64,000 nucleotides of DNA from positions 124,001 through 188,000 of the IMG/VR virus record IMGVR_UViG_3300010403_000705. The stretch is one strand, 5' to 3'. Position 1 is the first letter of the stretch. Every line of letters starts with the position of its first letter. A program made the translations under genes and the position numbers. Shown here one piece after another: positions 2,727 to 54,540 of the stretch. The notes below the pieces were generated by a model. The model saw only the letters and a list, made by a program, of their open reading frames with translations. It ran no database searches and was not told the origin of the DNA.

Positions 2727-5700
2727 ATGACATTTATTAAATTAGGTGAATTTATTGAAATTAACAGAGTAGAAAATACTGAATCTTGTATTCCTGCCGT
2801 TAGTGCTGAAGTATTAGAAAATTTTAAAAAAATTGCAATGAACTTAAAAAAAGTTGCTCCAAGAGCAGAAGATTTTTTATATTTTTCTGCAGTTATGATG
2901 CACGCCGCTGAAGCTTCTGGACTTAATGATGATGGCACGCCTAAATTAAATTCTAAAGGTGAAGAAGTTCAAGTTGGCTGGGATAAAAAAAATGGTACTT
3001 GGCGATGGACAACTAACGATCCTAATATTAGACCATATAAAAATTCTAATGGTGATATTTTTCCAGAGGAAGAATTAGTTAAAGCATATAAAAAATGGAT
3101 ACATAAGCCTTTATGTGTTGATCACAAATCTAGTTCAGTTGATCATACAAGAGGATTTATTGTTGATACATACTATGATAGGAATTTAAAAAGAGTTATT
3201 GCGTTATGCGCTTTAGATAAAGCTAATTATCCAGATTTAGCAAGAAAAATTTCAACAGGAATGCAAACTTGCGTATCTATGGGAACTGCTGTAGGACGAG
3301 CTATTTGTACAGAAGAAGGTTGTCATCGTGTAGCTCGTGCTGAATCAGATTTTTGTGAGCACATGAAGCGTAAGACATGCTATGGTGAAATTAACATTGA
3401 TTTAAATCCTATTGAATTATCAATTGTTGTTAATGGCGCTGATCCAAAAGCAAATATTAAGCACATTATCGCTTCTGCTCATACACTTAATAGTTATATT
3501 GAAACTAAACAAAAAGAACTTAATAAATTAGCAGAACAAGAATTTATAGCTAATTTAACATTCAATAATGATAGTGATAGTAATAATACAATAACTAATA
3601 TTAGTGTTAGGTCTGGTTCTTTGGATAGTTTTAAAAAAGATTTAGAAAAAGCTATTGATGATTATCAATCATTAAATTCTTCAATACAAGAAGAAAATAT
3701 TAATTTAGATACTAATGATCTTGCATTTAATCAATCATCTGGCACTGTTGCGATGGACGAATCTCAAATTTCTAACACTGATTCTGGATTAGCACCACCT
3801 CATGCAAGATATGCATCACAAAAGATATTAGATGCAAATTCTATTAAAGAATTACGTGAAATAACAGCCACCATTGAATATAAATTAAATTATATGAAAG
3901 ATAGTTTAAATAAGTTAGCAAATTCTATAAATATACACGAGGAAATCATGCCTTCAAAAGAAATAAATAAAAAGGGTTATTACCTAGGAACGGAAGAGCC
4001 CACCCCTGGTCAGCCTAAATATCCAGTAGATAAAGGTCACATGACTTATGAAGAGGATAAGCATTTACATGGTCAAAAACCATTTCCTGACACGGGTCCA
4101 ATAGATGGAATGCATCCTGGTGTAGAAAGCGCAGGCGTTTCTGAATTAGAACGTAAAAAAATGTTAGCTCGTGCTGAGGCAGAAGAAAGAGCAATCCGCC
4201 GCCAAGCAATAGTTAATCTTGCTAAACAAGCTTTAGAAGATAAAAAAGCACAAGCTTTAGAAGATAAAAAAGCTTATTACGGTAATGGAGATGAAAAAAA
4301 TCCTGGCTTCCCAACTCCCGGCAAACCTAAATATCCAGTAGATAAAGGTCACATGACTTATGAAGAGGATAAGCATTTACATGGTCAAAAACCATTTCCA
4401 GGTGTTGGCGCAGTAGATGGATTACATCCAAGTCCAGAATCAGCTGAAGTATCTGATGAGTTAAAACGTAAAGAATTACTGCATAGAGCAAATACACTAC
4501 ATGGTAGATTTGTAAGAGCAGCTAAGAATGATGGTACTAGAGACTTAGATAATAGTGCTTGGGAAATCCGCTTAGGTGATAAGTTATTGTTAACTGCATC
4601 TGTAAAAGATCTTTCTGGTGGACGATCAGAAATGATGTATGATAGTATCAATACTGCTGAATTTGGGCAAAGACTACTAGAAAAAGTAAAAGTATATGGA
4701 GCTGACAGAGTGCGTTCCTTGGTAAAAAGTGGTCAAGAAACACCGGCGCCTGCTGCACCTCCGGCTGATGCTGCTCCAGCCGTTCCGCCAGAAACAACAC
4801 CTCCAACTGAAACTCCTACCCCTAATGGAGAAGATACTGGTAAAAGTGGAGATCCAAAAGAATCAGCCATAGAATTATCTGAGAAAGTTAGAGATGTAAG
4901 TTCAGATTTAGTTGAAGCTGTAAGAGCTTTAACTGGTGAACAAGCCGAAATGGGTGCTGATATGGGTGCAGCACCTGAGATGGCAGCCACAGCTTCTGAT
5001 TTCAATACCGAACACATGAATGCTTTAAGAGGTGAACTTAATGAATCTCTTACAAGTGCTATGAAAGAAGTTATTGCAGAACTTAATGACCACCAACAAG
5101 AATTAGACATGATAGTTGGTATGTATGATAAGGGCGCAGTAGTTGCTTCAAATGAAGATTTTATTAATACTATTGTAAATGACGCTTTTAATGAAGCTAA
5201 AACTGCAGTTGCCAATGGTTTCAGATTAATGACTGCCTTTGTTAAATACGCTCGTGGCACCAAAGCCATTGTCAAACGTGCAGAAATAGAAGCAGAGCTA
5301 CAGGCATTAGCAGAGGGAGGAGATACTTCGATGAATTCAGAGATTGGTAGTGATGAAGATTTAATGAATCTTATACAAGATACAAATTCAGATTTAAATT
5401 CTGTCCAAGAATTAATGTTTGAGGACACAGATGATGATACAGGTACTGATTTAGAAGGTGGAGATGATTCATTAGAGTCTTTAGAAGAACAGTCGCTTGA
5501 GTTACCTGAAGAAGAACTTACAAATAGTGAAGATCCTCTTGATTTAGAATCTTTACCTACTGATGATAATGATTTAATGGCAAAACCAGAAGAATTAAAA
5601 GATCTACAAGTTAAACCAGGTACTACTGTTCAAATAACAGCAAACTTGCAAACAAAACAAGGACGCGCTGTCCTTCGTGCCAAATTAGCGGCAGATGCTT

Positions 5701-6407
5701 TAGGTAAACCAGATGACGGTCAACTTCAAGACATGTCGAAAGCTAAGTTTAGTGATATGCTAGATGAAGCAGATAGTTTAACCAATGGACAAATTAAAGG
5801 ATTAGACACTAAGCCTTCAGATAATATGGCTTATGTAGAAACTTTACCAGAAGTTAATAAAGCCATGATGGATCTAGCCAAGGCTCCACCAAAAGTACGT
5901 AAAGAGGCGGAAGCAATTCACAGATTAGTCAGCGAAGGCAAACTTGATCCATCAGATTTAGAAGCTTTAGTGGCAGAAGGTCTGGATAAAGATGCTGTGT
6001 CATACTATAAAAAATATTATGGACAAACTGATGGAGGTAGTGAATTTGCAAGTGAGTTAGTTAAAGAGCATGTAAAAGCTCAATTAGAGGATGAGTTAAA
6101 TAAATATAGAATTAAATTAGCTAGGGCTTATGAAGTAGCATATGATATGGTTGAACGCGGATTATGTCATAATGATAAAATAGCTATCTCTTCACAAGTA
6201 GATGAGATTATGAAATTTAACGATGATAGTTTTGATACTCTTAAAAGAGTTGTCGCAAGACATGCTCCTATATTACGTAAAGAAGCTGGACGTATGCCAC
6301 AAGTTGGAATAATTGGATCTGGTGAAAGTAACACATCAGTAACCCCAGAAGACGATTGGTCGCTATTATCAGCAGCATTTGCTAAGACTTCTACAAGGAT
6401 GTTTTAA
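2727..6407 (+). CDS. prohead (capsid maturation) serine protease fused to scaffolding protein
   Basis: N-terminal ~250 aa has clan-SH / HK97-type protease motifs PLCVDH, CVSMG and ELSIVVNGADPKA plus a C-x4-C...CEH insert; remainder acidic, helical, repeat-containing; upstream of capsid gene. Confidence 0.8.
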   Translation: MTFIKLGEFIEINRVENTESCIPAVSAEVLENFKKIAMNLKKVAPRAEDFLYFSAVMMHAAEASGLNDDGTPKLNSKGEEVQVGWDKKNGTWRWTTNDPNIRPYKNSNGDIFPEEELVKAYKKWIHKPLCVDHKSSSVDHTRGFIVDTYYDRNLKRVIALCALDKANYPDLARKISTGMQTCVSMGTAVGRAICTEEGCHRVARAESDFCEHMKRKTCYGEINIDLNPIELSIVVNGADPKANIKHIIASAHTLNSYIETKQKELNKLAEQEFIANLTFNNDSDSNNTITNISVRSGSLDSFKKDLEKAIDDYQSLNSSIQEENINLDTNDLAFNQSSGTVAMDESQISNTDSGLAPPHARYASQKILDANSIKELREITATIEYKLNYMKDSLNKLANSINIHEEIMPSKEINKKGYYLGTEEPTPGQPKYPVDKGHMTYEEDKHLHGQKPFPDTGPIDGMHPGVESAGVSELERKKMLARAEAEERAIRRQAIVNLAKQALEDKKAQALEDKKAYYGNGDEKNPGFPTPGKPKYPVDKGHMTYEEDKHLHGQKPFPGVGAVDGLHPSPESAEVSDELKRKELLHRANTLHGRFVRAAKNDGTRDLDNSAWEIRLGDKLLLTASVKDLSGGRSEMMYDSINTAEFGQRLLEKVKVYGADRVRSLVKSGQETPAPAAPPADAAPAVPPETTPPTETPTPNGEDTGKSGDPKESAIELSEKVRDVSSDLVEAVRALTGEQAEMGADMGAAPEMAATASDFNTEHMNALRGELNESLTSAMKEVIAELNDHQQELDMIVGMYDKGAVVASNEDFINTIVNDAFNEAKTAVANGFRLMTAFVKYARGTKAIVKRAEIEAELQALAEGGDTSMNSEIGSDEDLMNLIQDTNSDLNSVQELMFEDTDDDTGTDLEGGDDSLESLEEQSLELPEEELTNSEDPLDLESLPTDDNDLMAKPEELKDLQVKPGTTVQITANLQTKQGRAVLRAKLAADALGKPDDGQLQDMSKAKFSDMLDEADSLTNGQIKGLDTKPSDNMAYVETLPEVNKAMMDLAKAPPKVRKEAEAIHRLVSEGKLDPSDLEALVAEGLDKDAVSYYKKYYGQTDGGSEFASELVKEHVKAQLEDELNKYRIKLARAYEVAYDMVERGLCHNDKIAISSQVDEIMKFNDDSFDTLKRVVARHAPILRKEAGRMPQVGIIGSGESNTSVTPEDDWSLLSAAFAKTSTRMF
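3948..6407 (+). CDS. putative nested in-frame scaffolding protein (819 aa) from internal Met408
   Basis: GAGGA 3939-3943 then AATC then in-frame ATG 3948; repeat region starts just after this Met. Confidence 0.5.
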   Translation: MPSKEINKKGYYLGTEEPTPGQPKYPVDKGHMTYEEDKHLHGQKPFPDTGPIDGMHPGVESAGVSELERKKMLARAEAEERAIRRQAIVNLAKQALEDKKAQALEDKKAYYGNGDEKNPGFPTPGKPKYPVDKGHMTYEEDKHLHGQKPFPGVGAVDGLHPSPESAEVSDELKRKELLHRANTLHGRFVRAAKNDGTRDLDNSAWEIRLGDKLLLTASVKDLSGGRSEMMYDSINTAEFGQRLLEKVKVYGADRVRSLVKSGQETPAPAAPPADAAPAVPPETTPPTETPTPNGEDTGKSGDPKESAIELSEKVRDVSSDLVEAVRALTGEQAEMGADMGAAPEMAATASDFNTEHMNALRGELNESLTSAMKEVIAELNDHQQELDMIVGMYDKGAVVASNEDFINTIVNDAFNEAKTAVANGFRLMTAFVKYARGTKAIVKRAEIEAELQALAEGGDTSMNSEIGSDEDLMNLIQDTNSDLNSVQELMFEDTDDDTGTDLEGGDDSLESLEEQSLELPEEELTNSEDPLDLESLPTDDNDLMAKPEELKDLQVKPGTTVQITANLQTKQGRAVLRAKLAADALGKPDDGQLQDMSKAKFSDMLDEADSLTNGQIKGLDTKPSDNMAYVETLPEVNKAMMDLAKAPPKVRKEAEAIHRLVSEGKLDPSDLEALVAEGLDKDAVSYYKKYYGQTDGGSEFASELVKEHVKAQLEDELNKYRIKLARAYEVAYDMVERGLCHNDKIAISSQVDEIMKFNDDSFDTLKRVVARHAPILRKEAGRMPQVGIIGSGESNTSVTPEDDWSLLSAAFAKTSTRMF
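4014..4399 (+). repeat. 74-bp perfect direct repeat (4014-4087 and 4326-4399)
   Basis: Both copies read cctaaatatccagtagataaaggtcacatgacttatgaagaggataagcatttacatggtcaaaaaccatttcc (PKYPVDKGHMTYEEDKHLHGQKPFP). Confidence 0.97.
4226..4273 (+). repeat. 24-bp perfect tandem duplication
   Basis: acaagctttagaagataaaaaagc x2, encoding QALEDKKA twice. Confidence 0.95.
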
Positions 6408-6424: not shown

Positions 6425-7129
6425 ATGAGAAATAAAAGTGTATCAGATTTTGTCGCTGCCTCTATGGATGCAGTATTAAAGAGTGCGACACACCAATCTA
6501 TGTTTAACAACACATATAAATTTGCATCACAGCAATGTGAAAAATGTCATAAAACTATGGAAGAATGTTCATGTGATAGTAATAGCGCAGATGATAATGA
6601 TGTGAAAAAGAATTCAGATTCATCTAGTGATAGTAGCTCTAGTGATTCTAGCAGTGCTTTTGATGGCATACTAGATACAAATGACGTATCAGATAAAGAA
6701 GAAGATTGCACTGAAGAAATGGAATCATCTGCTCTTGATGTAGCAATAGATAGTTTACTTACAGCGTCCGCTGCTCTCGATCGTGCAGGATTAGAAAGAG
6801 GATCTTCTCTCAGTTTGAAACTAGCATCATTGGTAGTAGAAGCTAAGAAAAAAGAAGATAGCAAAAAGAAAGATTCTAAAAAAAGTAACAGTGATTCTAA
6901 AAAGAAAAGCGATTCTAATGATGCTAGAGCCAAGAAAAAGAAAGAAGAAGATATGAAGAAAAAGAAGGAAGAAGCGGCAAAAGCTAAGAAATTAAAAGAT
7001 TCTAATGACGCTAGAGCCAAGAAAAAGAAAGAAGAAGATTCTAAAAAATCTTCCTCAAGATCATCTTCATCGTCCTCTAGTTCCAGCTCTAGTAAAAGAC
7101 CTAATCCATTTCTAAAAAAAAGTAAATAG
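6425..7129 (+). CDS. low-complexity acidic/basic head-region protein
   Basis: 234 aa; Ser/Asp-rich middle, helical AALDRAGL motif, Lys/Ser-rich tail; AAGGA SD. Confidence 0.7.
   Translation: MRNKSVSDFVAASMDAVLKSATHQSMFNNTYKFASQQCEKCHKTMEECSCDSNSADDNDVKKNSDSSSDSSSSDSSSAFDGILDTNDVSDKEEDCTEEMESSALDVAIDSLLTASAALDRAGLERGSSLSLKLASLVVEAKKKEDSKKKDSKKSNSDSKKKSDSNDARAKKKKEEDMKKKKEEAAKAKKLKDSNDARAKKKKEEDSKKSSSRSSSSSSSSSSSKRPNPFLKKSK
6911..7039 (+). repeat. 42-bp direct repeat (6911-6952, 6998-7039), one mismatch
   Basis: gattctaatga(t/c)gctagagccaagaaaaagaaagaagaagat = DSNDARAKKKKEED twice. Confidence 0.9.
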
Positions 7130-7173
7130 TACTAGTTAAAAATATTGTTAAGTTTTTATAATGGATAAATTAT

Positions 7174-7395
7174 ATGTTTAAAATTAGCAGCTCCGAAGAA
7201 GAACTTTATCGTTCTATGCAAAATAAAATGTGTTCTAACCAATTAGAAAATAAATACAGTTTTGATAAAATTTCTAGAGCTGCTGATTATCTAAATTCTG
7301 CTGCTTCAATTTTTGATCAAGCTGGAATGAAAAAAGAAGCAGCAGAAATAACTGAAGTATTATCAGATTTAGCTAAACAAATATCTTCTAAGTAA
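7174..7395 (+). CDS. small helical protein, paralog of the N-terminus of 7403..8059
   Basis: 73 aa; RAADYLNSAASIFDQAGMKKEA vs KAADYINSAIEIFEDMGMYKHA. Confidence 0.8.
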   Translation: MFKISSSEEELYRSMQNKMCSNQLENKYSFDKISRAADYLNSAASIFDQAGMKKEAAEITEVLSDLAKQISSK

Positions 7396-7402
7396 GGCAA
7401 TA

Positions 7403-8059
7403 ATGATTAAAAAAAGTGTATTTGAAAATGAGTTAATTACTGGTATGCACAATCAGTTACTGAAGCAAGCCAAGCATCAAGATGATGAGCATCTTGAAAA
7501 GGCGGCAGATTATATTAATTCAGCAATTGAAATTTTTGAAGATATGGGTATGTATAAGCATGCTGATAAATTATTATATATATTAACCAAAATTGCCACT
7601 CATGATACTAAGGTTAAAAAATTGCCCTCCGAAGAAGCCTTAAAAGAAGAGGGAGCATCATATAATGATTTTGGTGCCATGAAATATAGTACATATGCTA
7701 AGGCTAAAGTTAATAATGCGCTTAGAAGATTAGGGTATACTGATAGAGAAATTAAAGAGCTAATTGGTGACCATAATTTTATTTCTTTCGAGGAACAAGA
7801 AAAATTACTAGACATGCCGCCATCATTTAAAGTCAGATTGCAGAATATCAGAGAAAATGTAAGAGCTTCTCATTTATCAGATCGTCATACAAAAGGATTA
7901 ACATCTGAAAAAATGATATCAAATTTAAAAGACCATGGTACAGTCTTCAATTTATCTGATGATGGTAAAATAGGAGATTTAGATATTGGTGAAGATACAT
8001 TAGAAGTATCTGATAATACTATTACTGAAATTCAAGATTTTGAAGATGAAATAGATTAA
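7403..8059 (+). CDS. putative internal head protein
   Basis: 218 aa; N-terminal ~65 aa paralogous to 7174..7395; acidic C-terminus. Confidence 0.65.
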   Translation: MIKKSVFENELITGMHNQLLKQAKHQDDEHLEKAADYINSAIEIFEDMGMYKHADKLLYILTKIATHDTKVKKLPSEEALKEEGASYNDFGAMKYSTYAKAKVNNALRRLGYTDREIKELIGDHNFISFEEQEKLLDMPPSFKVRLQNIRENVRASHLSDRHTKGLTSEKMISNLKDHGTVFNLSDDGKIGDLDIGEDTLEVSDNTITEIQDFEDEID

Positions 8060-8113
8060 TATAATTGTTATATAAGTATGAGAGTTTATAATATTGATTA
8101 ACAAGGATGTCTC

Positions 8114-8803
8114 ATGCTTAGATTAGTACAAGTTGGAAACACATTACCTGGTAGTTTTATCGTCGATCCTTCGGCAGAATTTCAACCTGGACAAATTGCT
8201 GAATTAACTGTTTTAGGAAACCAAGTAATGGTAACAGTGAGTAATGGAACTGCACCACTTGGCATCATTGATGATATTAAAACTAGAGCATTTACTAATG
8301 TATCTTGGAACGAGGAAGTACGAGTTCCTGCAGTTGGTGTACCTGGACCTAACAATGTTTTAGTAACTCCTATTGATATTAAAGCTGAATTAAGAAGACC
8401 TAATATAATACGTTCTAGTTTTTCTTCTACTATTAAAGCAGAATTAAATCCCGTTAATGGTGTTATTACTTTTTTAGCAGGTACACCTCTTAACATCGAT
8501 TTAATAGGTGCGGGTCAACCTAATGGCATTAAAGCTATTGTTAATTACACATATCAAGTAGCAAATATCCCAGGTGATGATAGTACACAAGGATCTGGTA
8601 GAGTTACTGTATGGTTTAATAGAATGTTTTTTCAAACCGATCAATATGAGACTAATCAACAATATCCTGTCAAAGCTAATTTATATGTTAGTGAAGTTGG
8701 ATTTTTAACTACTAGAAGACCTAGTACTATACATCCCGCAGTTGCTATGGTAACTGCACCACCTACTCCAATTAATCCCATGATAGAATGTCTTTGGTAC
8801 TAG
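8114..8803 (+). CDS. capsid decoration/cement-like protein, paralog 1
   Basis: 229 aa, beta-rich; MLRLVQVG and GSGRVTVW match MALKLLQPG and GSGKVTLW of the gene directly upstream of the capsid gene. Confidence 0.55.
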   Translation: MLRLVQVGNTLPGSFIVDPSAEFQPGQIAELTVLGNQVMVTVSNGTAPLGIIDDIKTRAFTNVSWNEEVRVPAVGVPGPNNVLVTPIDIKAELRRPNIIRSSFSSTIKAELNPVNGVITFLAGTPLNIDLIGAGQPNGIKAIVNYTYQVANIPGDDSTQGSGRVTVWFNRMFFQTDQYETNQQYPVKANLYVSEVGFLTTRRPSTIHPAVAMVTAPPTPINPMIECLWY

Positions 8804-8840
8804 AGGTAAAAGTTGATATATATAGTAGTGTGGAGAAATT

Positions 8841-9547
8841 ATGCACTATTTATATAAAATTACAAATGTTATTAACAACAAAGTTTACATAGGACAAACT
8901 AATAGTCCAAATTATAGGTGGTATCAGCATTGTTCTTACGCAAAAAAGAAAACAAACACAAACAATATATACATTATGCCATGGCAAAATATGGTGTTGA
9001 AAATTTTACATTTACAATAATTGCGTCTTGTATTGTAAATGATCAAATTGATATTGATAATATAGAAAATATTATAATTAATCAATACAATAGCAGAAAT
9101 AAAGAATTTGGTTATAATTTAAGAGTTGGCGGTAGTCGCGGTTTTCATTCTGAAAAAACAAAACAAAAAATAAGACAAGCTACTTTAAAATAAATCGCAG
9201 AAAAAGGTCATCCTGCTTTAGGTCATAAATGGACACAAGAACAAAAAGATAAATTAAGTATTGCTTTAAAATCTTTAGATAAAGAAAAAATATATACTTC
9301 TGAAGTTAGACAGCATATGTCAGAGGCTCATCTTGGTCATCAAGATTCCAAGGAAACCAAAGAAAATAAATCAGAAAGTGCCAAGCGAGTATGGGTGCAA
9401 AGAATTGATTATTCTGAAATAAAATGTCAAGCAACAAATTGCTCCATTACGGGGAAGGCAAAATATAAAATTGTTGATAACATTAGATATTGTAATAAAC
9501 ATGGCTTAAGAATGTTACGTCATGGAAAATTAGAAAGATTAAAATGA
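8841..9547 (+). pseudogene. GIY-YIG homing endonuclease with NUMOD3-like repeats, disrupted
   Basis: GGAG SD, ATG 8841: MHYLYKITNVINNKVYIGQT; frame break in the A-tract at 8942-8948; continues ...YGVENF...GYNL...GG; in-frame TAA 9191-9193; then HxxExKxK-type repeats to 9547. Confidence 0.9.
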
Positions 9548-9703
9548 AGTTTATAAATGTTTGAGATGTGATTCACTAATATCTCTGGCTGAGTGGAATA
9601 AAATTTATAGATTTTCTATTATCACACAATATATTTTATTAATTAGTTATACTGCATATATTTTCATATAATATAGATTATACTATATATTTGAGGCTTA
9701 CCT

Positions 9704-10810
9704 ATGACTTTTAAGCATATAAAATTTGAAGATTCCTCTACAATGCGTTCTTTAGAAAAAGTAGCGCGAGATAAAGGTTGGATTAGTAACACACCAATAT
9801 CTAAAATTGCCTCTATAAGTAAAGTTGATTTATCAATCTCAACTAATTTAACAGAAAATATTATGAAACTATGTGCGGGATTGAGATCATCCGGATTAGA
9901 TAAATATGCAAATGAAGTTGAGTCAAAATTCATGAATTATAAAAAAGCTCAAACTTTGTATGAAACATCAAAAGAAGTTGGTGAGGATCTAATTGATAAC
10001 GCTCATCCTAAAGGATCTCATAAGTTAAGTGGTATTGAAGGTGATAATATTATTGAAACTATTATTGATCAACATCTTGCAACTATTAAATTAACAGAAA
10101 AAAAACCAACTGGTAAACTATCTTCTCAAGATATTTTGCGATCAGTTAAAATAGTACTTTCACAAGCTGCTAGCAACCCTACTATTGTACAAGCTCTTAC
10201 TTCAGCGTTAAATGCCATGAAGACTATATTCAGTCTTCATAGCGAGCAATCTTTTTTAACACGTCCAATTGCATGGGGCGAAGATACATTGATAGAAAAT
10301 ATTAATTATGCTTTAAACAATACACATGATGTAAATGTACTAGAGAGAATTTATCCTAAAATTAAATTAGGTGTAGACAATTTTTATCTTGCCTACAAAC
10401 CAGGTACTGTTATTGGAGGTTCTAGCGCAGAAGTGTGGGCAGGTATGTTACCACTGTTTAATAAAGTATATGCTGCATTAACTACTATAAAACAAACAAT
10501 GGAAAATTCAAATAGTAAGATTCAACCAAAAACTTCAGTAGATGTATTAACTCAATGGTTACATAATGCTAATTCTACCTTAAAAGGTTTTCAAGCTAAG
10601 ATAAGTACAGATCCAGATCTAACTGAAAGTGAGAAACAAGAAGCTAGCACTTGGATAGTTAAAAAGATGAATAATGTCGCTAATGTAGAATCTCAGTTTC
10701 AATCTATGGACGATGACGAGAAAATACAAAATGCTGAATTACTATTATCTAATTTAAAAAAAATAACAACTCCTAGTTTCGGACAATTTAAAAAAGCATG
10801 GATAGATTAA
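9704..10810 (+). CDS. putative internal head/ejection protein, paralogous N-terminus with 14653..15888
   Basis: 368 aa; SLEKVARDKGWI, LYE...DLIDNAHP, KKPTGKL align by eye with FFKIAQEQGLI, LYG...NIIEDAHP, KVPNGHL. Confidence 0.55.
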   Translation: MTFKHIKFEDSSTMRSLEKVARDKGWISNTPISKIASISKVDLSISTNLTENIMKLCAGLRSSGLDKYANEVESKFMNYKKAQTLYETSKEVGEDLIDNAHPKGSHKLSGIEGDNIIETIIDQHLATIKLTEKKPTGKLSSQDILRSVKIVLSQAASNPTIVQALTSALNAMKTIFSLHSEQSFLTRPIAWGEDTLIENINYALNNTHDVNVLERIYPKIKLGVDNFYLAYKPGTVIGGSSAEVWAGMLPLFNKVYAALTTIKQTMENSNSKIQPKTSVDVLTQWLHNANSTLKGFQAKISTDPDLTESEKQEASTWIVKKMNNVANVESQFQSMDDDEKIQNAELLLSNLKKITTPSFGQFKKAWID

Positions 10811-10818
10811 AAGGGTTT

Positions 10819-11973
10819 ATGTCTGATAAATTAAATTTAATTAAAAAATACGCACAACAAACTGAAGATATACCTATTCCAACTAGAAAATCTCCTAAAA
10901 CTAAACAAGTCTCACAACAGAATGTAGATTCCAATATACCAGTAGCAAAAAAAATGGGACCAACTATTAAGGAACGTCTTCAAAATATAGTACCAGGATT
11001 TGCTTCCAAAAAAAATGCGCCAGGTAACTCTGCGCAGCAAATGGCAGATGCTATTAGTGCAGTTAAAGAAATGCAAACTGCAATGCAAAACTTAGCACAA
11101 ACAGTAATTACAGATGCGGAGTCTGGCACTATGGCATATAAACCAAAAGATGCCACTCAACCAGGAGCTAGTGATGAAGTAAAAACATCTAAAAAAAGTT
11201 TTAATGATTTTATTGCTGAGCAATATTTAGGTGGTTTAGACGAAGATAAGAAAGGTGTAGAATGGACCAAAGATACGCATGTAGTAACTTTACCAGGCAA
11301 GCAAAAAACACAAACAGACATTTATGAATTAGATGTTGTTATGGATACTTTGCGTAGAGTAGGTGCAAGTACTAAAGAATTTACAGTAGACGGTAAATGG
11401 GATTTTAGAACAGATAATGCATTAAGAAATATAATGGGTTTTGCTTATGCTTTATTACAATTAGAAGGTGATTTTGGACTAGAAAATAATATTTATACTT
11501 TTGATCACTGGAAAAATTTTAATAAAGCTTTATCTGAGTATAAAATAGAAAATGGAATAGTAAAACTTTCAGCGGCACATAAAATAACAAGAGCCAACGC
11601 TATCACTAAACATTTGAGAGCAATTAGTAAATTATATAATCATTTTAGACAACAAGTATTGGCTAGACCAGAATTTAGACCCACTATAGAAGGAAAAAGA
11701 CCTTTTGATAGGTATACGACACAAGGTTCTAATAAAAATGTTTTAACAGCACCAGAGGAACAAATGTCAAAATCAGATGCTATCAAAATTCCGCTTAACA
11801 CACCTTATTCTGCGCCTAATTTACCTAATAAAAAATTAGATTATATTCCAATTAAAGCACTACTTAATAGAAGCGAGTACATAAAATGGATGGTTAATTA
11901 CGCTGGTAATACAGAAGTTGCTGCTATGGATATTTTCAATAAAATTATAAAACCTAAAATTGAATTAATGTGA
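10819..11973 (+). CDS. putative internal head protein
   Basis: Track ORF 10798..11973; ATG 10819 after AAGGG preferred; begins MSDKLNLIKKYAQQ. Confidence 0.55.
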   Translation: MSDKLNLIKKYAQQTEDIPIPTRKSPKTKQVSQQNVDSNIPVAKKMGPTIKERLQNIVPGFASKKNAPGNSAQQMADAISAVKEMQTAMQNLAQTVITDAESGTMAYKPKDATQPGASDEVKTSKKSFNDFIAEQYLGGLDEDKKGVEWTKDTHVVTLPGKQKTQTDIYELDVVMDTLRRVGASTKEFTVDGKWDFRTDNALRNIMGFAYALLQLEGDFGLENNIYTFDHWKNFNKALSEYKIENGIVKLSAAHKITRANAITKHLRAISKLYNHFRQQVLARPEFRPTIEGKRPFDRYTTQGSNKNVLTAPEEQMSKSDAIKIPLNTPYSAPNLPNKKLDYIPIKALLNRSEYIKWMVNYAGNTEVAAMDIFNKIIKPKIELM

Positions 11974-11981
11974 AGGATACT

Positions 11982-13517
11982 ATGTCTTTTTTATATGATT
12001 TATATAATGAGTCTATGAATGATTTTCTTTTTAAAAAAACTGCTCAAAACATACCACCTATATCTCCTAATGAAGTTGCTAAAAAATTAGTTAGTAGACT
12101 AGAAAGAGAAATATCGGGTATACCAGAATCATTAAATATTTCTTCTGAAAATTCTAGTTCTGTTGATTTAGGAGTTAATCAATTACAAAATTTAGGAAAA
12201 TTACTTCAGTTCATGTCAGCTAATAAAATAAAAGTTGATAATATAAGAGTAGTATTTCCAGAGGCTGAAGCTAGTTCTTTACCAGAAGAAGAAAGACATA
12301 AACTATCTCCTGTTAGTGTCAATATGTCTAGAGATGCTGTTAGTAGAAAATGGAACACTGCCGATTTTTACACAAATCTTCCTTTATTAATAAAATATGT
12401 TACTTATCTACAAAATAAAGCTCAGGAATTAAAAAGAAATGGGGATGTCCAGGGCAGAATATTAGAAGTAATGATTGGTAAATTAATAGATTCTGTAAAT
12501 AATATCAAACCTGATTCTGGACTTTCTAGATCTCCTAAATCTAAACCAGATTTGCCTAATGAAATGCCGCAAGAAACAGTGGTAGATAATTTCGGAACAA
12601 AAATTTTCGACATTAATAATCCATATACTGATAAAGGACCACTAGTTCTAACTGGTAAAGATTTATTTAGCAAAGAATCTTTAAATGCTTGGATGAAACA
12701 GGCTCCAGAAGCACAAATTTTAGATGGACAATCATCAATAAAATTTACGGATCCTTCAGCGAATCATTGTAATATAATTAATGTGTTACACAAACGTGCT
12801 TCTAATTTAGTTAGAATTTCTTCTTCACCAGAAGATACAAAAAAATATAATTTTTATTTGAATAAGATAACCCAATTAGGACCCGCATTTACAGATCCTC
12901 AAGGGAAAGCTTGTAGTATTGGAGGGTCAACTTCACCTTCAGCAGGTCTATATAATAAACATAATTTTTTGGGACAGCCGGGGGGAGATGGTACTGGTGG
13001 TACTGGCATTTCTACACAAATTCTAGAACAACTTGTTCAAAGCCTTCCTCTTGATCCGCAAGATATAGATTTTAATCGTATTAGAAACTTTTTTAATTTA
13101 TATACTAGAGTAACATCTAGTGATAATGCACAATCTGCTATTACTTCTATGGGAACCGCTTTATATGCTATGACCACTGTTTCTGGATTAACACTAACAG
13201 GAAACCAACAAAATTTTAGGATAACTAGAAACGTACAAGAATTAATTACATGGTTAAAATCACCTGCCGGTAATAATGCTCTTCAATTTTTATATGCATT
13301 ACAGCAAATTATAACAGAGACTGGTAAAGTATTAAGAATGTTCTATAATGAATTTGTTAGAACTACTTATTCTGGAGATAGACAAACTTTAAATAGTGAG
13401 CAAAAAGCTTTAGTAGAGTCACAGATTCTGGGAGCTAATTCTATTTACTCGCAAAACCTTAGAGATATACAATCTTTAATAGCAAATTTTAAAAATACTG
13501 TGAGTACACAAAAATGA
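11982..13517 (+). CDS. putative internal head protein
   Basis: Track ORF 11970..13517; AAGGA SD then ATG 11982; FKKTAQ near the N-terminus. Confidence 0.55.
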   Translation: MSFLYDLYNESMNDFLFKKTAQNIPPISPNEVAKKLVSRLEREISGIPESLNISSENSSSVDLGVNQLQNLGKLLQFMSANKIKVDNIRVVFPEAEASSLPEEERHKLSPVSVNMSRDAVSRKWNTADFYTNLPLLIKYVTYLQNKAQELKRNGDVQGRILEVMIGKLIDSVNNIKPDSGLSRSPKSKPDLPNEMPQETVVDNFGTKIFDINNPYTDKGPLVLTGKDLFSKESLNAWMKQAPEAQILDGQSSIKFTDPSANHCNIINVLHKRASNLVRISSSPEDTKKYNFYLNKITQLGPAFTDPQGKACSIGGSTSPSAGLYNKHNFLGQPGGDGTGGTGISTQILEQLVQSLPLDPQDIDFNRIRNFFNLYTRVTSSDNAQSAITSMGTALYAMTTVSGLTLTGNQQNFRITRNVQELITWLKSPAGNNALQFLYALQQIITETGKVLRMFYNEFVRTTYSGDRQTLNSEQKALVESQILGANSIYSQNLRDIQSLIANFKNTVSTQK

Positions 13518-14599
13518 AGCGAAACTGTAATAGTGAAATAGATTTTTATGTAGATAGTATTATAGTAGAAACTATTTTAAGAGATGAAAAAATAACTAAA
13601 TATGCTGATACGACTAGTAGCGGATTAGTATTATCATTAATTGATAAAGTTAAAAATTATGTAAGTAATCATATTGATCCTGACGATAAGTCTGGCAGTC
13701 TTATTAGCATATTAGGACCTGGTGCTATATCAGTTGCTTTTAGCGCCATGGGACTGAGTTGGTTAGGCACGTTAATTGGTTTAGCTATGAGAGTATTTAA
13801 TATTAATGTAAAAGACATTATCAGTTCTATTTGGGACAAACTTAAATCTGCGATAGCTGGAGATAAACCAGTATCTTCCGCACAAGTAGATTCTTTTGTT
13901 CAAAGTGCGATACAAGAACATTCTCAGCCAGCTACACAAGAAGAAGCAGAAAAAGCTGCAAAAAATATGGAAAGCAAATCATTTTCAAAACTTGTTAGAG
14001 ATGCACAATTTGTTAAGTTAGCTATGATAAATTATGAAAATGATTCTTTTAGAAAAGAAGCTGGATTTTTTGAAATGTTCAGTAGCAGAAAATCTAAAAC
14101 TGTTTCGATTTTAACAAGAGTGCTTAGTTGGATTTTTAAGATTGCTCTAGCATCTGCTGGGCTCATGGTAGCAGGAGATGTTGTAAACAAATTTGTAGGT
14201 AGACCTAATGCCATTGATAATACTATTCAAAAAGGTAAGCCTATTGAACAACCCATAGTTCCCGCTAATATATCTAAACAAAAAAAATTTTTAGTTAAAC
14301 CTACCTATAATGCTAACGAAAAATACAACACCAGAGATTCTAATTGGATAGAAAGAATATCTAATGATCCATCTTCTATTGAAAACATGTTAATATCTTT
14401 TGTTAAAGAAGTATATGAAGGATTAAACGGCAAAGAGAATATTATTAAAAGCTCACCAGCTTTTCAAATGGTTAAAAATAGAATTATTTGGTATAATCAT
14501 ACTAGTCCTAATTCACCTATGATATGGATTCCAAAATATTTTTCTTCCAAAAAACAAATTGTCGATTATTTCATTGATGATGTAGCAGAAAGGGCATAA
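13514..14599 (+). CDS. putative internal/ejection protein with hydrophobic helices
   Basis: 361 aa; TKYAD and RKEAG motifs, each upstream of an apolar segment (GSLISILGPGAISVAFSAMGLSWLGTLIGLAM; VLSWIFKIALASAGLMVAG). Confidence 0.55.
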   Translation: MKRNCNSEIDFYVDSIIVETILRDEKITKYADTTSSGLVLSLIDKVKNYVSNHIDPDDKSGSLISILGPGAISVAFSAMGLSWLGTLIGLAMRVFNINVKDIISSIWDKLKSAIAGDKPVSSAQVDSFVQSAIQEHSQPATQEEAEKAAKNMESKSFSKLVRDAQFVKLAMINYENDSFRKEAGFFEMFSSRKSKTVSILTRVLSWIFKIALASAGLMVAGDVVNKFVGRPNAIDNTIQKGKPIEQPIVPANISKQKKFLVKPTYNANEKYNTRDSNWIERISNDPSSIENMLISFVKEVYEGLNGKENIIKSSPAFQMVKNRIIWYNHTSPNSPMIWIPKYFSSKKQIVDYFIDDVAERA

Positions 14600-14652
14600 T
14601 AAAATTGTGCATATGCTGACATATCTTTGTAATTTTGCCTGTGAGATAATCA

Positions 14653-15888
14653 ATGAATAAACGTAGAAGCGATGTTTTAGATAATTTCTTTAAAATAGCA
14701 CAAGAACAAGGTTTAATTTCAAATAAAAATACAACAGAAAAAACTAAACGAAAATTAGAAAAAACACACCGAGCTGATTCGTTAAGTGCCAAAGATATTG
14801 AAGAACTTTATGGAATCAAACCAGAAATGTCTAAAGGTAATCAATATACAAGAAATATTATTGAAGACGCTCATCCTACATCATATATCGCTGCTCCTTC
14901 ATATGATAAACTAAATGGTTTAGTGGAAAACGAAAATGAAAGACAAGATATTACATTACATATTTTAAATAAAGTTCCTAATGGACATCTGACTGGTCAT
15001 AAATATGCTGCAAAAGATTTAATATTATCACTAGTAAGAGTGGGTAATGATTTAGATCATAAAAATAATGATCGATTACGAATATTAGCAGATACTTGTT
15101 TGCTACAAGTTAGCCAACCAATGAAAAAAAATGCAGCTGCCGTATTGATAGCAATTCCGGTATTACTTGGATCCTTATATCTGCAACAACATTTATCATT
15201 CGTTAATGAAGGGTTTGAAAAAAATCATCAAAAAATAATTGCTGAAATAGACGATTTATTACAATCTAGTTCTTCGTGGGGAATAGGATATGATTATAAA
15301 TCAGATTTCAAAAATATGGTGCAAGATTTTAAAACTAAACTAATGAATTTTTATACACTATATAAAAAAATAGAACCTATAATTACTGATTTAGAAAAAC
15401 CAAGAACAGCAAAAGATTTAATAGAATTATCAAAACAACCACAAACAGATACAGTGGTAAAAGCTTACGGTGCCCTTAAATCCGCAGCAGACAATATGTT
15501 ACCTTATATTATTACTATTGAAAAAAACTTTGCTTCAGAAACTTATAAAACTAGACAAATAGAAGATAAAGGATTTATGTCTTCTCTAGTTGATAATCTA
15601 CAAGTTTTTCATGGAGGAAAAGGACTAGTAGCTGATGATTTTGAGGATATTGTAAGAGCTATTGATCCATACAAAAAATCTATAAATGATTTAGTTAATA
15701 TATTAAAAAATGCTGAATCTATTGAGAAATCAGCACAGCAGAAAATACAGGAAGCATCTGCATCAGAAACAAATACTCCTAATGAATTTGATTCTACAAC
15801 TCAAAAAGTTGAACCAACAATGGAAAAATCAGATGTTGATCAACAAGTGGAAGATTTAGAAAAAGATCTTGCCGGTGGACTATTATAA
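14653..15888 (+). CDS. putative internal/ejection protein
   Basis: 411 aa; N-terminus paralogous to 9704..10810; KKNA followed directly by hydrophobic AAVLIAIPVLLGSLYL. Confidence 0.55.
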   Translation: MNKRRSDVLDNFFKIAQEQGLISNKNTTEKTKRKLEKTHRADSLSAKDIEELYGIKPEMSKGNQYTRNIIEDAHPTSYIAAPSYDKLNGLVENENERQDITLHILNKVPNGHLTGHKYAAKDLILSLVRVGNDLDHKNNDRLRILADTCLLQVSQPMKKNAAAVLIAIPVLLGSLYLQQHLSFVNEGFEKNHQKIIAEIDDLLQSSSSWGIGYDYKSDFKNMVQDFKTKLMNFYTLYKKIEPIITDLEKPRTAKDLIELSKQPQTDTVVKAYGALKSAADNMLPYIITIEKNFASETYKTRQIEDKGFMSSLVDNLQVFHGGKGLVADDFEDIVRAIDPYKKSINDLVNILKNAESIEKSAQQKIQEASASETNTPNEFDSTTQKVEPTMEKSDVDQQVEDLEKDLAGGLL

Positions 15889-16839: not shown

Positions 16840-17853
16840 ATGAATATGTTCAATAATCAAAACACAATGAACGCCTCCTCTTTAAAAGATATGTTGCAAC
16901 AACTAGTAAAATATGCAGCAGTTTTAGAAGAGAATCAACCAGCCAATATGGGTCTAGCTGGTCAAGTTTCATTAAGTGATGATAAAAGAGATGAGTTAAT
17001 TTCACGTGCTATTGTTACTCAAGATGGTAAAATTGCTTTAGCACAAGCTATGGCAAATCCAATTAGAAGAAACTTAGATTATCATGGTATTGCACGACGT
17101 GCACTTGTTGTAGATCCTTTACCTCAAGCAGCTACACCAAGTTACGATAGAGATATTGATGTCGCAGCTGTTGTTATTTCATCCAATGGTACTGGACCAG
17201 AATCTAGGGTGTTTGGTGATAGAGTAGTTGTTCCTACATTTGAAATATATGCAAATCCTACTGTTAGAATTTCTGAAGTAAGACGTCGTAGATTTAATGT
17301 TATTGATAGAGCTGTACAAAAAGCCCGTCAAGAAATTATGGCTCAAGAAGATGCAAATATCTTTGCAGCTATGGATGCCGCTGCTTCAGTAGAAAATACT
17401 TTAACTGATATTGCAGATGCAGGTCTTCTAAAAAGAGATCTTGTAGAAATAAAACAACAAATTGATCGTTGGGATTTAGTAACCACTAAATATTTTATGA
17501 ATATCAATGAATTCACTGATATGCTAAAATGGGGTTCCGGTGGTGGTCAAGGTGTTGGCGGTGGAGATTTTGATCCTGTGACTATGAGAGAAGTATTACA
17601 AACTGGTTTATATGCTCATATTTGGGGTACAGATATTATGGTAAGTAAAATTGTACCACCAGGCACAATTTATGGAGCAGCAGATCCTGAATTCGTGGGA
17701 GTAATGCCAATTAGACAAGATATCGAAGTTCTTCCTGCAGACGAACCAAAACAACTAAAACTTGGTTGGGTAGTTTCAGAAGAAATTGGAATCGGAATTG
17801 TAAATCCAAGAGGCGTCGCTGCCGGTAGAAAGAGTGTTGTTCTAGGCGCTTAA
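16840..17853 (+). CDS. major capsid protein (HK97-like fold)
   Basis: 337 aa; strong SD; downstream of protease/scaffold and decoration genes, followed by a terminator; LVVDPLPQ E-loop-like segment and terminal GWVVSEEIGIGIVNPRGV strand typical of HK97-fold capsids. Confidence 0.88.
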   Translation: MNMFNNQNTMNASSLKDMLQQLVKYAAVLEENQPANMGLAGQVSLSDDKRDELISRAIVTQDGKIALAQAMANPIRRNLDYHGIARRALVVDPLPQAATPSYDRDIDVAAVVISSNGTGPESRVFGDRVVVPTFEIYANPTVRISEVRRRRFNVIDRAVQKARQEIMAQEDANIFAAMDAAASVENTLTDIADAGLLKRDLVEIKQQIDRWDLVTTKYFMNINEFTDMLKWGSGGGQGVGGGDFDPVTMREVLQTGLYAHIWGTDIMVSKIVPPGTIYGAADPEFVGVMPIRQDIEVLPADEPKQLKLGWVVSEEIGIGIVNPRGVAAGRKSVVLGA

Positions 17854-54187: not shown

Positions 54188-54540
54188 TTAAATTAAATAA
54201 TACTATTTATAATAAAATGCAATTGCAGTCTGAAGAGGCTAAAGAGCAAGGTCTATTGAAATTGGCTGAATCAGTTAAAAATGCTATAGGTGATTCATAT
54301 AATATGGATCATAAATTAGAGTATTCATCTGAAGATTTAGATAAACAAATACATCGATATCTATGGAAGATTGCTACTACTTTAACAGCATTTCATAATT
54401 TAGAAAGTATAGATATAGAGAAAGTTGATAAAACTTTAATTTCTTGGGCAGATAAAATAGTAAATGATTTAGAAAAAACATTACAAATACCAAATACAAT
54501 AAAAGGTCCTTTGGAACCTAAGTTACCGGGTGAAGAATAA
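54184..54540 (+). CDS. small helical hypothetical protein
   Basis: 118 aa; EEAKEQGLLKLAESV resembles the helical motif of head-region proteins. Confidence 0.65.
   Translation: MIKLNNTIYNKMQLQSEEAKEQGLLKLAESVKNAIGDSYNMDHKLEYSSEDLDKQIHRYLWKIATTLTAFHNLESIDIEKVDKTLISWADKIVNDLEKTLQIPNTIKGPLEPKLPGEE

What the first reader, a model, noticed from the sequence alone, without database searches (positions are those of the whole stretch)
6425..15888. Shared helical leader motif (A..(L/F)D..G(L/M)...A) across paralogous head-region proteins: possible capsid-targeting signal
Seen: the 73-aa ORF 7174 is almost entirely a paralog of the first ~65 aa of 7403 (RAADYLNSAASIFDQAGMKKEA / KAADYINSAIEIFEDMGMYKHA). 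Similar helices occur in 6425 (ASAALDRAGLERGS), 9704 (CAGLRSSGLDKYA), 14653 (VGNDLDHKNNDRL) and the baseplate-region ORF 54184 (EEAKEQGLLKLA). They often sit beside a K-x-A motif and next to unrelated sequence. Inference: a modular scaffold-binding/targeting domain loading diverse cargo into the prohead, analogous to the T4 internal-protein capsid targeting sequence; the stand-alone 73-aa copy could be an adaptor or core filler.
Basis: partly seen in the sequence, partly recalled or inferred. Interest (0 to 1): 0.72.

Follow-up and report, generated by a model that had tools for sequence, protein, structure and literature searches.

The report
Paired helical-hairpin head-module proteins

Summary
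The window is part of a 432,844-bp virus record from a soil metagenome.

Only 7174 (73 aa) and the first ~66 aa of 7403 (218 aa) are demonstrably related (BLASTP E 3e-10; family profiles 99.4%, E 3.5e-21). HMMs built from 2 or 205 family members do not recover the other four ORFs:
- 6425: E 0.13-1.5; profile-profile probability 2-3.5%.
- 9704, 14653, 54184: E 0.9-88.

9704 and 14653 are true paralogs of each other, but the quoted "motifs" lie at non-homologous positions.

What is real is a two-gene cassette that is always adjacent (spacing median -1 nt). It is present in 74 of 76 related huge-phage loci, between the protease-scaffold gene and the capsid gene. The duplication is ancient (A and B clades split with support 100/99.9).

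The shared domain is an N-terminal alpha-hairpin with one TPR-like motif. It is fused in different phages to at least 32 unrelated tails. I infer a hetero-oligomeric head-assembly accessory pair; the complex prediction gives only weak support. Function is untested.

The parts
7174..7395 (+). A-type gene: 73-aa protein made almost only of the shared N-terminal alpha-hairpin domain. The TPR-like core is at aa 35-56 (nt 7276-7341).
   Evidence: BLASTP against 7403, E 3e-10. Family HMM E 1.4e-29. Orthologues lie immediately upstream of the B gene in 74 of 76 loci. The A clade is monophyletic with support 100/99.9.
7403..7600 (+). B-type gene, N-terminal domain (aa 1-66): long helix 4-47, turn, helix 51-65.
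   Evidence: AF2 model. Family HMM E 2.3e-30. The profile of A plus B finds 453 representative clusters, nearly all matched at residues 1 to about 70.
7601..7870 (+). B-type gene, optional middle domain (aa 67-156): a small helical domain, pLDDT 85-90, present only in the ~210-390-aa members of the family.
   Evidence: Domain mapping of 67 homologues, alignment A2, AF2 model.
7871..8059 (+). B-type gene, C-terminal signature (aa 157-218): D-x-H-T-x-G-L-T-x-x-K-M-x-x-N-L-x-x-H-G-x-x-x-N-x-x-D-D, then an acidic tail ending DFEDE. Mostly disordered in the model.
   Evidence: Invariant columns D160 T163 G165 L166 N174 L175 H178 G179 N183. The motif HMM hits only B-type proteins in the genome and in 76 loci.
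6425..7129 (+). Upstream neighbour (234 aa). It is at most a sub-threshold look-alike of the shared domain.
   Evidence: Family present in 73 loci. HMM E 0.13 and 1.5. hhalign probability 3.5% and 2.1%. AF2 gives H96-120, turn, H126-151 at pLDDT 58. Motif counts.
2727..6407 (+). 1226-aa protein read as a protease-scaffold fusion. The protease domain is at aa ~103-215. The long helical and low-complexity remainder is taken to be the scaffold from its composition and position, not from any match.
   Evidence: phrog_18299 head maturation protease, E 1.2e-11. 52 homologues of 1002-1252 aa in the related loci.
9704..10810 (+). 368-aa head-region protein, a true paralog of 14653 over its first ~140 aa.
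   Evidence: hhalign of the two families: 98.2%, E 4.7e-14, 110 columns. Against the shared domain: HMM E 47, hhalign probability 5% over 13 columns.
14653..15888 (+). 411-aa head-region protein, paralog of 9704.
   Evidence: Against the shared domain: E 0.92 on a different segment, hhalign P 0.24.
16840..17853 (+). Major capsid protein; marks the downstream end of the conserved block.
   Evidence: 53% identity to phage G gp27. phrog_2522 E 8e-76.
54184..54540 (+). Not related to the shared domain.
   Evidence: HMM E 34-42 and 21. No PHROG match.

Best explanation
SHOWN
- 7174 (A) and 7403 (B) are the two members of an ancient tandem duplication that is fixed in a clade of uncultivated huge phages with phage-G-like capsid proteins.
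- Both begin with the same ~70-residue domain: a long helix, a Gly-containing turn and a second helix. Its core (AxDYLNsAxxIFxxxGMxxxA) looks like a single TPR-type repeat.
- A is usually this domain alone. B adds an optional helical middle domain and an almost invariant C-terminal linear motif followed by an acidic DFEDE end.
- The two genes always abut or overlap.
- They sit in an invariant gene order between the protease-scaffold gene and the capsid gene.
- The resemblances in 6425, 9704, 14653 and 54184 are ordinary amphipathic helix-turn-helix segments at chance level.

INFERRED
- A and B are made together and pair through their hairpin domains into a helical bundle, forming a small hetero-oligomeric accessory of prohead assembly (a core, scaffold-associated or internal protein).
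- The B C-terminal motif serves as a docking peptide for another head component.
- The lineage-specific tails of A are passengers or adaptors.
For: - Paralogy.
- Two adjacent copies in 74 of 76 loci; the two exceptions are cut by contig ends.
- A-to-B spacing has a median of -1 nt, range -26 to 15, which suggests coupled expression. Gene order 6425 > A > B > 8114 > 9704 > ... > capsid is invariant.
- The A and B clades are separated by one branch with support 100/99.9.
- The domain is nearly always at residue 1: 453 representative clusters at E<=1e-3.
- TPR likeness: two TPR-like repeat proteins are hit with 10 and 7 stretches on profile positions 26-58. Sub-threshold ComR_TPR and SNAP hits occur in 6 and 4 of 23 B members.
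- Hairpin fold.
- Complex prediction of 7403 with 7174: verdict weak support, ipSAE 0.38 against a best control of 0.01. The mark was reached by 58 of 80 solved complexes and 2 of 110 mismatches. The three runs agree in at least 90% of contacts and the partner pLDDT is at least 63.
- Head-module context: TerL, portal, protease and capsid protein.
- The B C-motif is exclusive to B proteins.
Against: - No experimental data of any kind exist. There is no cultured relative, no virion proteome and no RNA run; a single soil DNA run holds the sequence.
- By the tool's own calibration, the complex score falls in the band that is more often wrong than right unless pairing was already likely.
- An alpha-hairpin is a generic fold. 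Fold searches gave only background: Foldseek PDB E>=1.8, VIA Z<=7.8, AFDB E>=0.8.
- Position in a head module does not prove a structural or assembly role. The same block also holds endolysin-like and phosphatase-like genes.
Confidence: 0.45

Rival explanations
1. One reading: one helical leader motif is shared by 6425, 7174, 7403, 9704, 14653 and 54184. It acts as a capsid-targeting or scaffold-binding signal that loads diverse cargo, as the T4 CTS does.
For: - The strings exist.
- 6425 ranks 4th of 1856 ORFs with the family HMM.
- All but 54184 lie in the head block.
Against: - No E-value is significant: 0.13 to 88. hhalign probabilities are 5% or less.
- The segments are internal, not N-terminal.
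- The 9704 and 14653 segments are at non-homologous positions of two true paralogs.
- The loose motif occurs at the chance rate.
- The ranks are what selection by eye among ~33 ORFs would give.
- An HMM of the N-terminal 28 residues ranks 6425 at 57th and 9704 at 190th of 1008 N-termini.
Confidence: 0.04
2. Restricted version of the reader's idea: the N-terminal domain of A and B alone is a prohead-anchoring module. It carries whatever is fused behind it (the B C-motif, or the lineage-specific A tails) into the assembling head. The stand-alone 73-aa form acts as a filler or adaptor.
For: - The domain is nearly always at residue 1 and is followed by at least 32 unrelated tail families.
- Its first ten residues are strongly conserved in both paralogs: M(F/I)K..(S/V)FE.E.
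- It lies directly downstream of the protease-scaffold gene.
Against: - There are only two carriers per genome.
- Most A proteins carry no cargo at all: 38 of 58 unique A proteins are 81 aa or shorter.
- Binding to the scaffold was not tested.
- No cleavage site is known.
- This is compatible with, and not clearly separable from, the heterodimer explanation.
Confidence: 0.2
3. 6425 is a third, very divergent paralog. Its N-terminal helix plus its conserved helix-turn-helix (aa 96-151) would correspond to the two halves of the shared domain, split by an inserted Cys knuckle and S-rich repeats.
For: - Alignments are consistently in the same register: AIDSLLTASAALDxxG(L/M) against A(A/I)D(Y/L)LNxAAxIFxxAGM.
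- 16.5% of A and B sequences exceed the shuffled 95th percentile with the 6425 HMM.
- AF2 puts the Gly at the turn between two helices.
- The gene is directly adjacent, and the ASDENDAK linker motif is shared with some B proteins.
Against: - E 0.012-1.5 and probability 2-3.5%.
- The N-terminal halves do not score: hhalign E 0.61, HMM domain score -0.6 bits.
- The A and B sequences are not independent of one another, so a consistent register adds little.
- The regex that singles out 6425 was written after seeing it.
Confidence: 0.2
4. A and B are not head components at all. They are small regulators or chaperones (for example TPR-like peptide binders) that merely sit in the late operon.
For: - TPR-like motifs usually mediate protein-protein regulation.
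- The block also contains non-structural genes.
- There is no proteome evidence.
Against: - The position between protease-scaffold and capsid genes is invariant over a deep clade.
- There is no DNA-binding or enzymatic signature.
Confidence: 0.2

Closest known systems
T4 capsid targeting sequence (CTS) of internal proteins IPI/IPII/IPIII and Alt (established knowledge; reviewed in PMC9958956 and PMC9026906, found but not read)
   Same: A conserved element at the very N-terminus of head-module proteins, followed by unrelated sequence. The genes lie near the protease and scaffold genes.
   Different: - The T4 CTS is about 10 residues, is carried by several unrelated cargo proteins of one phage, and is removed by gp21.
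- Here the element is a folded ~70-residue hairpin domain on exactly two paralogs per genome.
- No cleavage or targeting has been shown.
T4 gp67 and gp68 small prohead-core proteins (from my own knowledge)
   Same: Two small adjacent genes in the portal-protease-scaffold-capsid block. Plausible minor core or scaffold accessories.
   Different: There is no sequence or fold match. The T4 pair are not paralogs of each other. The analogy rests on position and size only.
Tetratricopeptide (TPR) repeat
   Same: The core helix-turn-helix has the TPR-like pattern of small and large residues. The family profile hits TPR-like repeat proteins P0081 and P0174 repeat by repeat. Sub-threshold ComR_TPR and SNAP hits occur.
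   Different: There is a single unit preceded by a long N-terminal helix, not a tandem array. All Pfam scores are below the gathering cut-offs (17.8 bits against 26.5).
Helical-hairpin scaffolding proteins such as phi29 gp7 (from my own knowledge)
   Same: A small helix-loop-helix protein that dimerises into a bundle, with an acidic C-terminal tail, encoded upstream of the capsid gene.
   Different: No detectable sequence or Foldseek similarity. This phage already has a 1226-aa protease-scaffold protein.
N-terminal propeptides of ejection and inner-body proteins in phiKZ/SPN3US-like giant phages (PMC5694885, PMC7411985, PMC10052503; found, abstracts only)
   Same: A giant-phage head block with many paralogous proteins of unknown function between the protease and capsid genes. 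9704 and 14653 are such a paralog pair.
   Different: Those propeptides are defined by mapped protease cleavage sites. No cleavage data exist here, and phiKZ-like phages were not compared with this genome here.

Membership tests
A/B N-terminal hairpin domain family (defined here; 453 clusters) | Significant match to the family HMM or profile: 7174 and 7403 | tested here: met
   E 1.4e-29 and 2.3e-30. hhalign 99.4%.
A/B N-terminal hairpin domain family (defined here; 453 clusters) | Significant match to the family HMM or profile: 6425 | tested here: inconclusive
   E 0.13 and 1.5. hhalign probability 3.5% and 2.1%. Consistent register but sub-threshold.
A/B N-terminal hairpin domain family (defined here; 453 clusters) | Significant match to the family HMM or profile: 9704, 14653, 54184 | tested here: not met
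   E 47, 0.92 (on another segment) and 34. hhalign probability 5% over 13 columns for 9704 and 0.3% for 14653.
A/B N-terminal hairpin domain family (defined here; 453 clusters) | Domain starts at residue 1 of the protein | tested here: met
   Met for 7174 and 7403. The look-alike segments of 6425, 9704, 14653 and 54184 start at aa 114, 57, 130 and 17.
T4-type capsid targeting sequence | The same short N-terminal peptide on several otherwise unrelated internal proteins of one phage | tested here: not met
   Only two carriers in the 433-kb genome, and they are paralogs. An N-terminal-28-residue HMM finds no other N-terminus among 1008 ORFs; the best other is E 0.54.
T4-type capsid targeting sequence | Removal by the prohead protease after targeting (T4: cleavage after L/I-x-E) | not testable with these tools
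   No proteome or N-terminal mapping exists. The protease is identified only through phrog_18299. There is no Pfam or PDB sequence match to class it.
T4-type capsid targeting sequence | Sufficient to direct a foreign protein into the prohead | not testable with these tools
   Needs an experiment.
TPR repeat proteins | Match to a TPR Pfam model above its gathering score | tested here: not met
   ComR_TPR scores 17.8 bits against a cut-off of 26.5. 6 of 23 B members and 0 of 33 A members hit it below threshold.
TPR repeat proteins | Tandem array of three or more 34-residue helix-turn-helix units | tested here: not met
   The AF2 model shows a single hairpin. Only one stretch per protein matches, except in the two true repeat proteins.
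Phage scaffolding or prohead-core protein | Present in proheads; required for head assembly; lost or cleaved on maturation | not testable with these tools
   Only the gene position supports it.

The most novel reading that the evidence does not exclude
The ~70-residue N-terminal hairpin is a genuine prohead-anchoring module of a large clade of uncultivated megaphages. A and B pair through it on the scaffold core. The variable tails fused behind it in different lineages (at least 32 unrelated families) are cargo delivered into the capsid, which would make it a folded-domain counterpart of the T4 CTS. The recurrent DxNDA(K/R) linker motif in 6425 and in some B proteins would then mark the maturation-protease cleavage sites.
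Probability: 0.12. Interest if true: 0.6.

Novelty: new member of a known kind. Interest (0 to 1): 0.3.

Why it matters
If the inferred role holds, the A/B cassette would be a conserved, previously unnamed accessory of head assembly in soil and freshwater megaphages, a group with only one cultivated relative (phage G), which itself lacks the cassette.

A domain that always sits at residue 1 and tolerates many different C-terminal fusions could be tried as a handle for packaging proteins into very large capsids. As it stands, this is an uncharacterised protein family with a clear genomic signature and no functional data.

The practical lesson for the scan is that short amphipathic helix-Gly-helix patterns recur by chance in helical phage proteins. 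They should be tested with profiles before being read as shared signals.

Tried and rejected
1. Shared N-terminal signal. By eye, the N-termini of 6425 (MRNKSVSDF..M..VLKSATHQ), 9704 (KFEDSSTMRSLEKVA) and 11970 resemble MIKKSVFENELITGMHNQLLKQAKHQ. An HMM of the first 28 residues ranked them 57th, 190th and 178th of 1008 ORF N-termini. Rejected.
2. 8114 and 16027 as paralogs. BLASTP E 0.029 and hhalign probability 3.2%. Not supported.
3. Known family for the domain. Pfam, PHROGs, PDB sequence search and the ESM Atlas gave nothing, or only unnamed viral clusters.
4. Known fold. Foldseek against PDB, BFVD and AFDB, and VIA wide, gave only own-family homologues or generic hairpins at background Z.
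5. Cultured carriers. tblastn of 7403 against 50,697 phage records found no match at E<=1. A profile search of phage G, Tunturi_5 and LR745208 was empty, while the positive control G001 gave both genes.
6. Pfam domains in the variable tails of ten representatives. None at E<=0.01, apart from one sub-threshold match (DEATH_SH3BP4) that falls on the shared N domain, not on a tail.
7. Classing the protease as T4 gp21-like or HK97-like. No Pfam or PDB sequence hit. Left open.
8. Expression data. Only one DNA run holds the region and no RNA run does.
9. Rejected, because the ORFs were selected by eye for resemblance.
Full report
**Origin and context**

The window is bases 124,001-188,000 of a single 432,844-bp contig with GC 0.33. 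The tools class it as a virus record. Only one public run holds the region, a 2017 soil-metagenome DNA run, and no RNA run does.

- The ORF at 16840-17853 is the major capsid protein: 53% identical to Bacillus phage G gp27, and phrog_2522 at E 8e-76.
- Upstream of the window lie the large terminase, the portal and an endolysin-like gene.
- ORF 2727-6407 (1226 aa) carries a head-maturation-protease domain at aa ~103-215 (phrog_18299, E 1.2e-11). A long helical, low-complexity remainder follows; I read this protein as a protease-scaffold fusion.

The finding therefore lies inside the head-morphogenesis block of an uncultivated megaphage.

**Checking the observation**

The central claim holds. 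7174 (73 aa) aligns with residues 1-67 of 7403 at 36% identity, E 3e-10.

The extension to the other four ORFs does not hold.

- A two-sequence HMM run with all heuristic filters off, against all 1856 ORFs of 40 aa or more in the genome, returns only 7174 and 7403 (E about 1e-43). The next hit is an unrelated ORF at E 0.29. 54184 scores E 42 and 14653 E 63; 6425 and 9704 are not within E 100.
- I enlarged the family through the 1.84-billion-protein representative library. This gave 453 clusters at E<=1e-3 and 190 at E<=1e-10.
- A 205-sequence HMM from that set gave 7403 E 2e-30 and 7174 E 1e-29.
- Splitting the HMM did not help. The N-terminal 28 residues rank 6425 at 57th and 9704 at 190th of 1008 N-termini. 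The hairpin core ranks 6425 at 7th with E 1.5.
- For profile-profile tests I built alignments of every neighbouring gene family from 76 related loci. hhalign against the domain gave probability 3.5% for 6425, 5% for 9704 over 13 columns, 0.3% for 14653 and below 1% for the rest.
- The tool's own hhalign gave 2.1% for the A family against the 6425 family. The positive control, A family against B family, gave 99.4%, E 3.5e-21.
A loose version matches 16 times against 10 +/- 3.3 in shuffles.
- Among the 33 window + strand ORFs scored with the core HMM, the four extra ORFs rank 3rd, 5th, 9th and 14th, interleaved with tail genes. This is the result expected when look-alikes are picked by eye.

**What is really there**

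- Homologues of 7403 are confined to metagenomic and IMG/VR contigs of up to 491 kb.
- In 74 of 76 loci there are exactly two ORFs with the domain, side by side. The two exceptions are cut by contig ends.
- The upstream ("A") gene is the orthologue of 7174 and the downstream ("B") gene is the orthologue of 7403.
- The gap between them has a median of -1 nt (range -26 to 15).
- The gene order is invariant in every locus: 6425-family, A, B, 8114-family, 9704, 10798, 11970, 13514, 14653, 16027, capsid (examples).
- A maximum-likelihood tree of 118 domains separates 59 A from 59 B sequences on one branch, with support 100/99.9.

The 73-aa ORF is thus an old, fixed gene and not a recent fragment.

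**Anatomy**

- The shared domain nearly always starts at residue 1.
- AF2 with 23 homologues (mean pLDDT 68.5) gives helix 4-47, a turn at the conserved Gly, and helix 51-65.
- The conserved core is AxDYLNsAxxIFxxxGMxxxA. The family profile also hits two TPR-like repeat proteins once per repeat (P0081 with 10 stretches, P0174 with 7). Several B members give sub-threshold ComR_TPR or SNAP matches. The core therefore looks like one TPR-type unit, but it fails every Pfam cut-off.
- B proteins add an optional helical middle domain (aa 67-156 here, pLDDT 85-90).
- B proteins also add a nearly invariant C-terminal signature, DxHTxGLTxxKMxxNLxxHGxxxNxxDD, followed by an acidic tail ending DFEDE. That signature occurs in no other protein of the genome or the loci.
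- A proteins are mostly the bare domain (68-81 aa), but about a third carry unrelated tails.
- Among 138 unbiased representatives, 52 have the B signature, 21 are stand-alone, and 62 carry tails that fall into 32 unrelated BLAST clusters. Ten representative tails gave no Pfam domain.

**Function**

Nothing known matches.

- Pfam, PHROGs, PDB sequences and the ESM Atlas gave nothing useful.
- Foldseek against PDB, BFVD and AFDB gave nothing beyond the family's own uncharacterised members.
- VIA wide returned only generic alpha-hairpins at Z<=7.8, which the tool states is background for helical models.
- Phage G, Tunturiibacter phage Tunturi_5 and LR745208, which share the capsid protein at 33-53% identity, lack the domain. 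A 480-kb positive control has both genes.
- According to PMC12484599, phage G is the only cultivated megaphage. No virion proteome can therefore be consulted.

Strict adjacency, overlapping stops and starts, and universal co-occurrence point to two subunits made together.

A complex prediction of 7403 with 7174 gave the verdict "weak support".
- Score: ipSAE 0.38 (runs 0.36, 0.38, 0.39) against a best control of 0.01.
- Calibration: the mark was reached by 58 of 80 solved complexes and 2 of 110 mismatched pairs, but scores of 0.60 or under are more often wrong than right unless pairing was already likely.
- Quality: the runs agree in at least 90% of contacts and the partner pLDDT is at least 63.

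My best reading is a hetero-oligomeric accessory of prohead assembly that pairs through the hairpins, with the B C-terminal motif as a docking peptide. That step is inference.

The idea of a modular N-terminal domain next to unrelated sequence is right for the A/B family across phages. A prohead-anchoring role cannot be excluded.

It is not a tag shared by many cargo proteins of this phage, for three reasons.
- There are two carriers per genome, and they are paralogs.
- The other segments are internal.
- 9704 and 14653 are true paralogs of each other (hhalign 98.2%, E 4.7e-14), yet the 9704 segment lies in an insert that 14653 lacks, and the 14653 segment lies beyond the homologous region.

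The defining features of the T4 CTS are either not met or untestable here.

**The 6425 question**

6425 is the only extra ORF with any trace of similarity.

- Its very conserved helix-turn-helix, AAFDVAIDSLLTASAALDsvGl..., aligns in a constant register on the hairpin core.
- AF2 places the Gly at a turn between helices 96-120 and 126-151 (pLDDT 58).
- All statistics remain sub-threshold, and the N-terminal halves do not score.

I leave it as a possible third, very divergent paralog, with probability about 0.2.

**Verdict**

The finding reduces to one real, conserved paralog pair of unknown function plus chance look-alikes. It is a tidy new family with a clear genomic signature, and of modest interest until an experiment shows what it does.

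Noticed in passing
window 8841-9547: Remnant of a GIY-YIG homing endonuclease between the 8114 and 9704 genes. It is 46-70% identical to aa 1-232 of the intact 305-aa GIY-YIG/NUMOD3 protein at the same position in L003. It is broken by a frameshift near 8942-8951 and an in-frame stop at 9191-9193, and it lacks the C-terminal ~70 aa.
   Followed up: partly
window 9704-10810 and 14653-15888: These two head-region proteins are true paralogs over their first ~130-140 aa (hhalign 98.2%, E 4.7e-14). Shared motifs are MRSLEKVAxxKGxIS, LY and (L/I)I(D/E)xAHP. Single-sequence BLASTP misses the relationship (E 0.24).
   Followed up: yes
window 6425-7129; also L002 7973-8713, L005 1819-2583, L018 10240-11319, L047 10001-10420: The motif [DSEN][DEQS]ND[AVT][KR], usually ADDNDA(R/K)KKK, occurs 165 times in 65 of 73 members of the 6425 family and 4 times in B-type linkers just before the C motif. 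It occurs zero times in 855 other + strand ORFs and in all other head families of the 76 loci. D[DE]ND is also present in 35 of 52 protease-scaffold homologues (window protein aa 946). It could be a protease cleavage or docking motif; untested.
   Followed up: partly
window 6536-6574 and 6860-7129: 6425 has a Cys knuckle, C-x2-C-x6-C-x-C (aa 38-50), and a long K/S/A/E-rich basic tail. Both are conserved in kind across the family. This suggests a zinc-binding, DNA-condensing or scaffold-like internal protein.
   Followed up: no
window 4005-4090 and 4317-4400 (2727 protein aa 427 and 531): The protease-scaffold protein contains an internal direct repeat, PG(Q/K)PKYPVDKGHMTYEEDKHLHGQKPFP, present twice about 104 residues apart. 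Read directly from the translation.
   Followed up: no
window 13700-13798, 14108-14185 (13514 protein) and 15133-15189 (14653 protein): Long hydrophobic stretches that look like transmembrane helices, in proteins encoded between the protease and capsid genes. This is reminiscent of ejection or internal proteins. Read from the sequence only.
   Followed up: no
window 16840-16970: The capsid protein has about 44 N-terminal residues that find no counterpart in phage G gp27 (the match starts at residue 45). They are conserved among the related loci. Possibly a propeptide.
   Followed up: no
window 8114-8803: This 229-aa protein is the most conserved gene of the block. It is present in 74 loci, and long runs of its N-terminal consensus are identical in at least 80% of sequences. 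It has no Pfam or PHROG match.
   Followed up: no
L069 9558-10004, L068 9417-9824, L006 4008-4493, L002 7587-7976: A-type proteins of other phages carry unrelated C-terminal tails. Examples are a KVEMEHTxDxxxAKEIAMDHL module, a 90-residue tail ending ALKVAKFFV, and a Cys-rich tail whose CDACAKTM resembles CEKCHKTM of 6425.
   Followed up: partly
G001:C1:322563-322670: In the 480-kb positive-control phage, a third weak match to the hairpin core (E 0.05, profile positions 35-70) lies inside a 2386-aa ORF. Probably another TPR-like unit.
   Followed up: no
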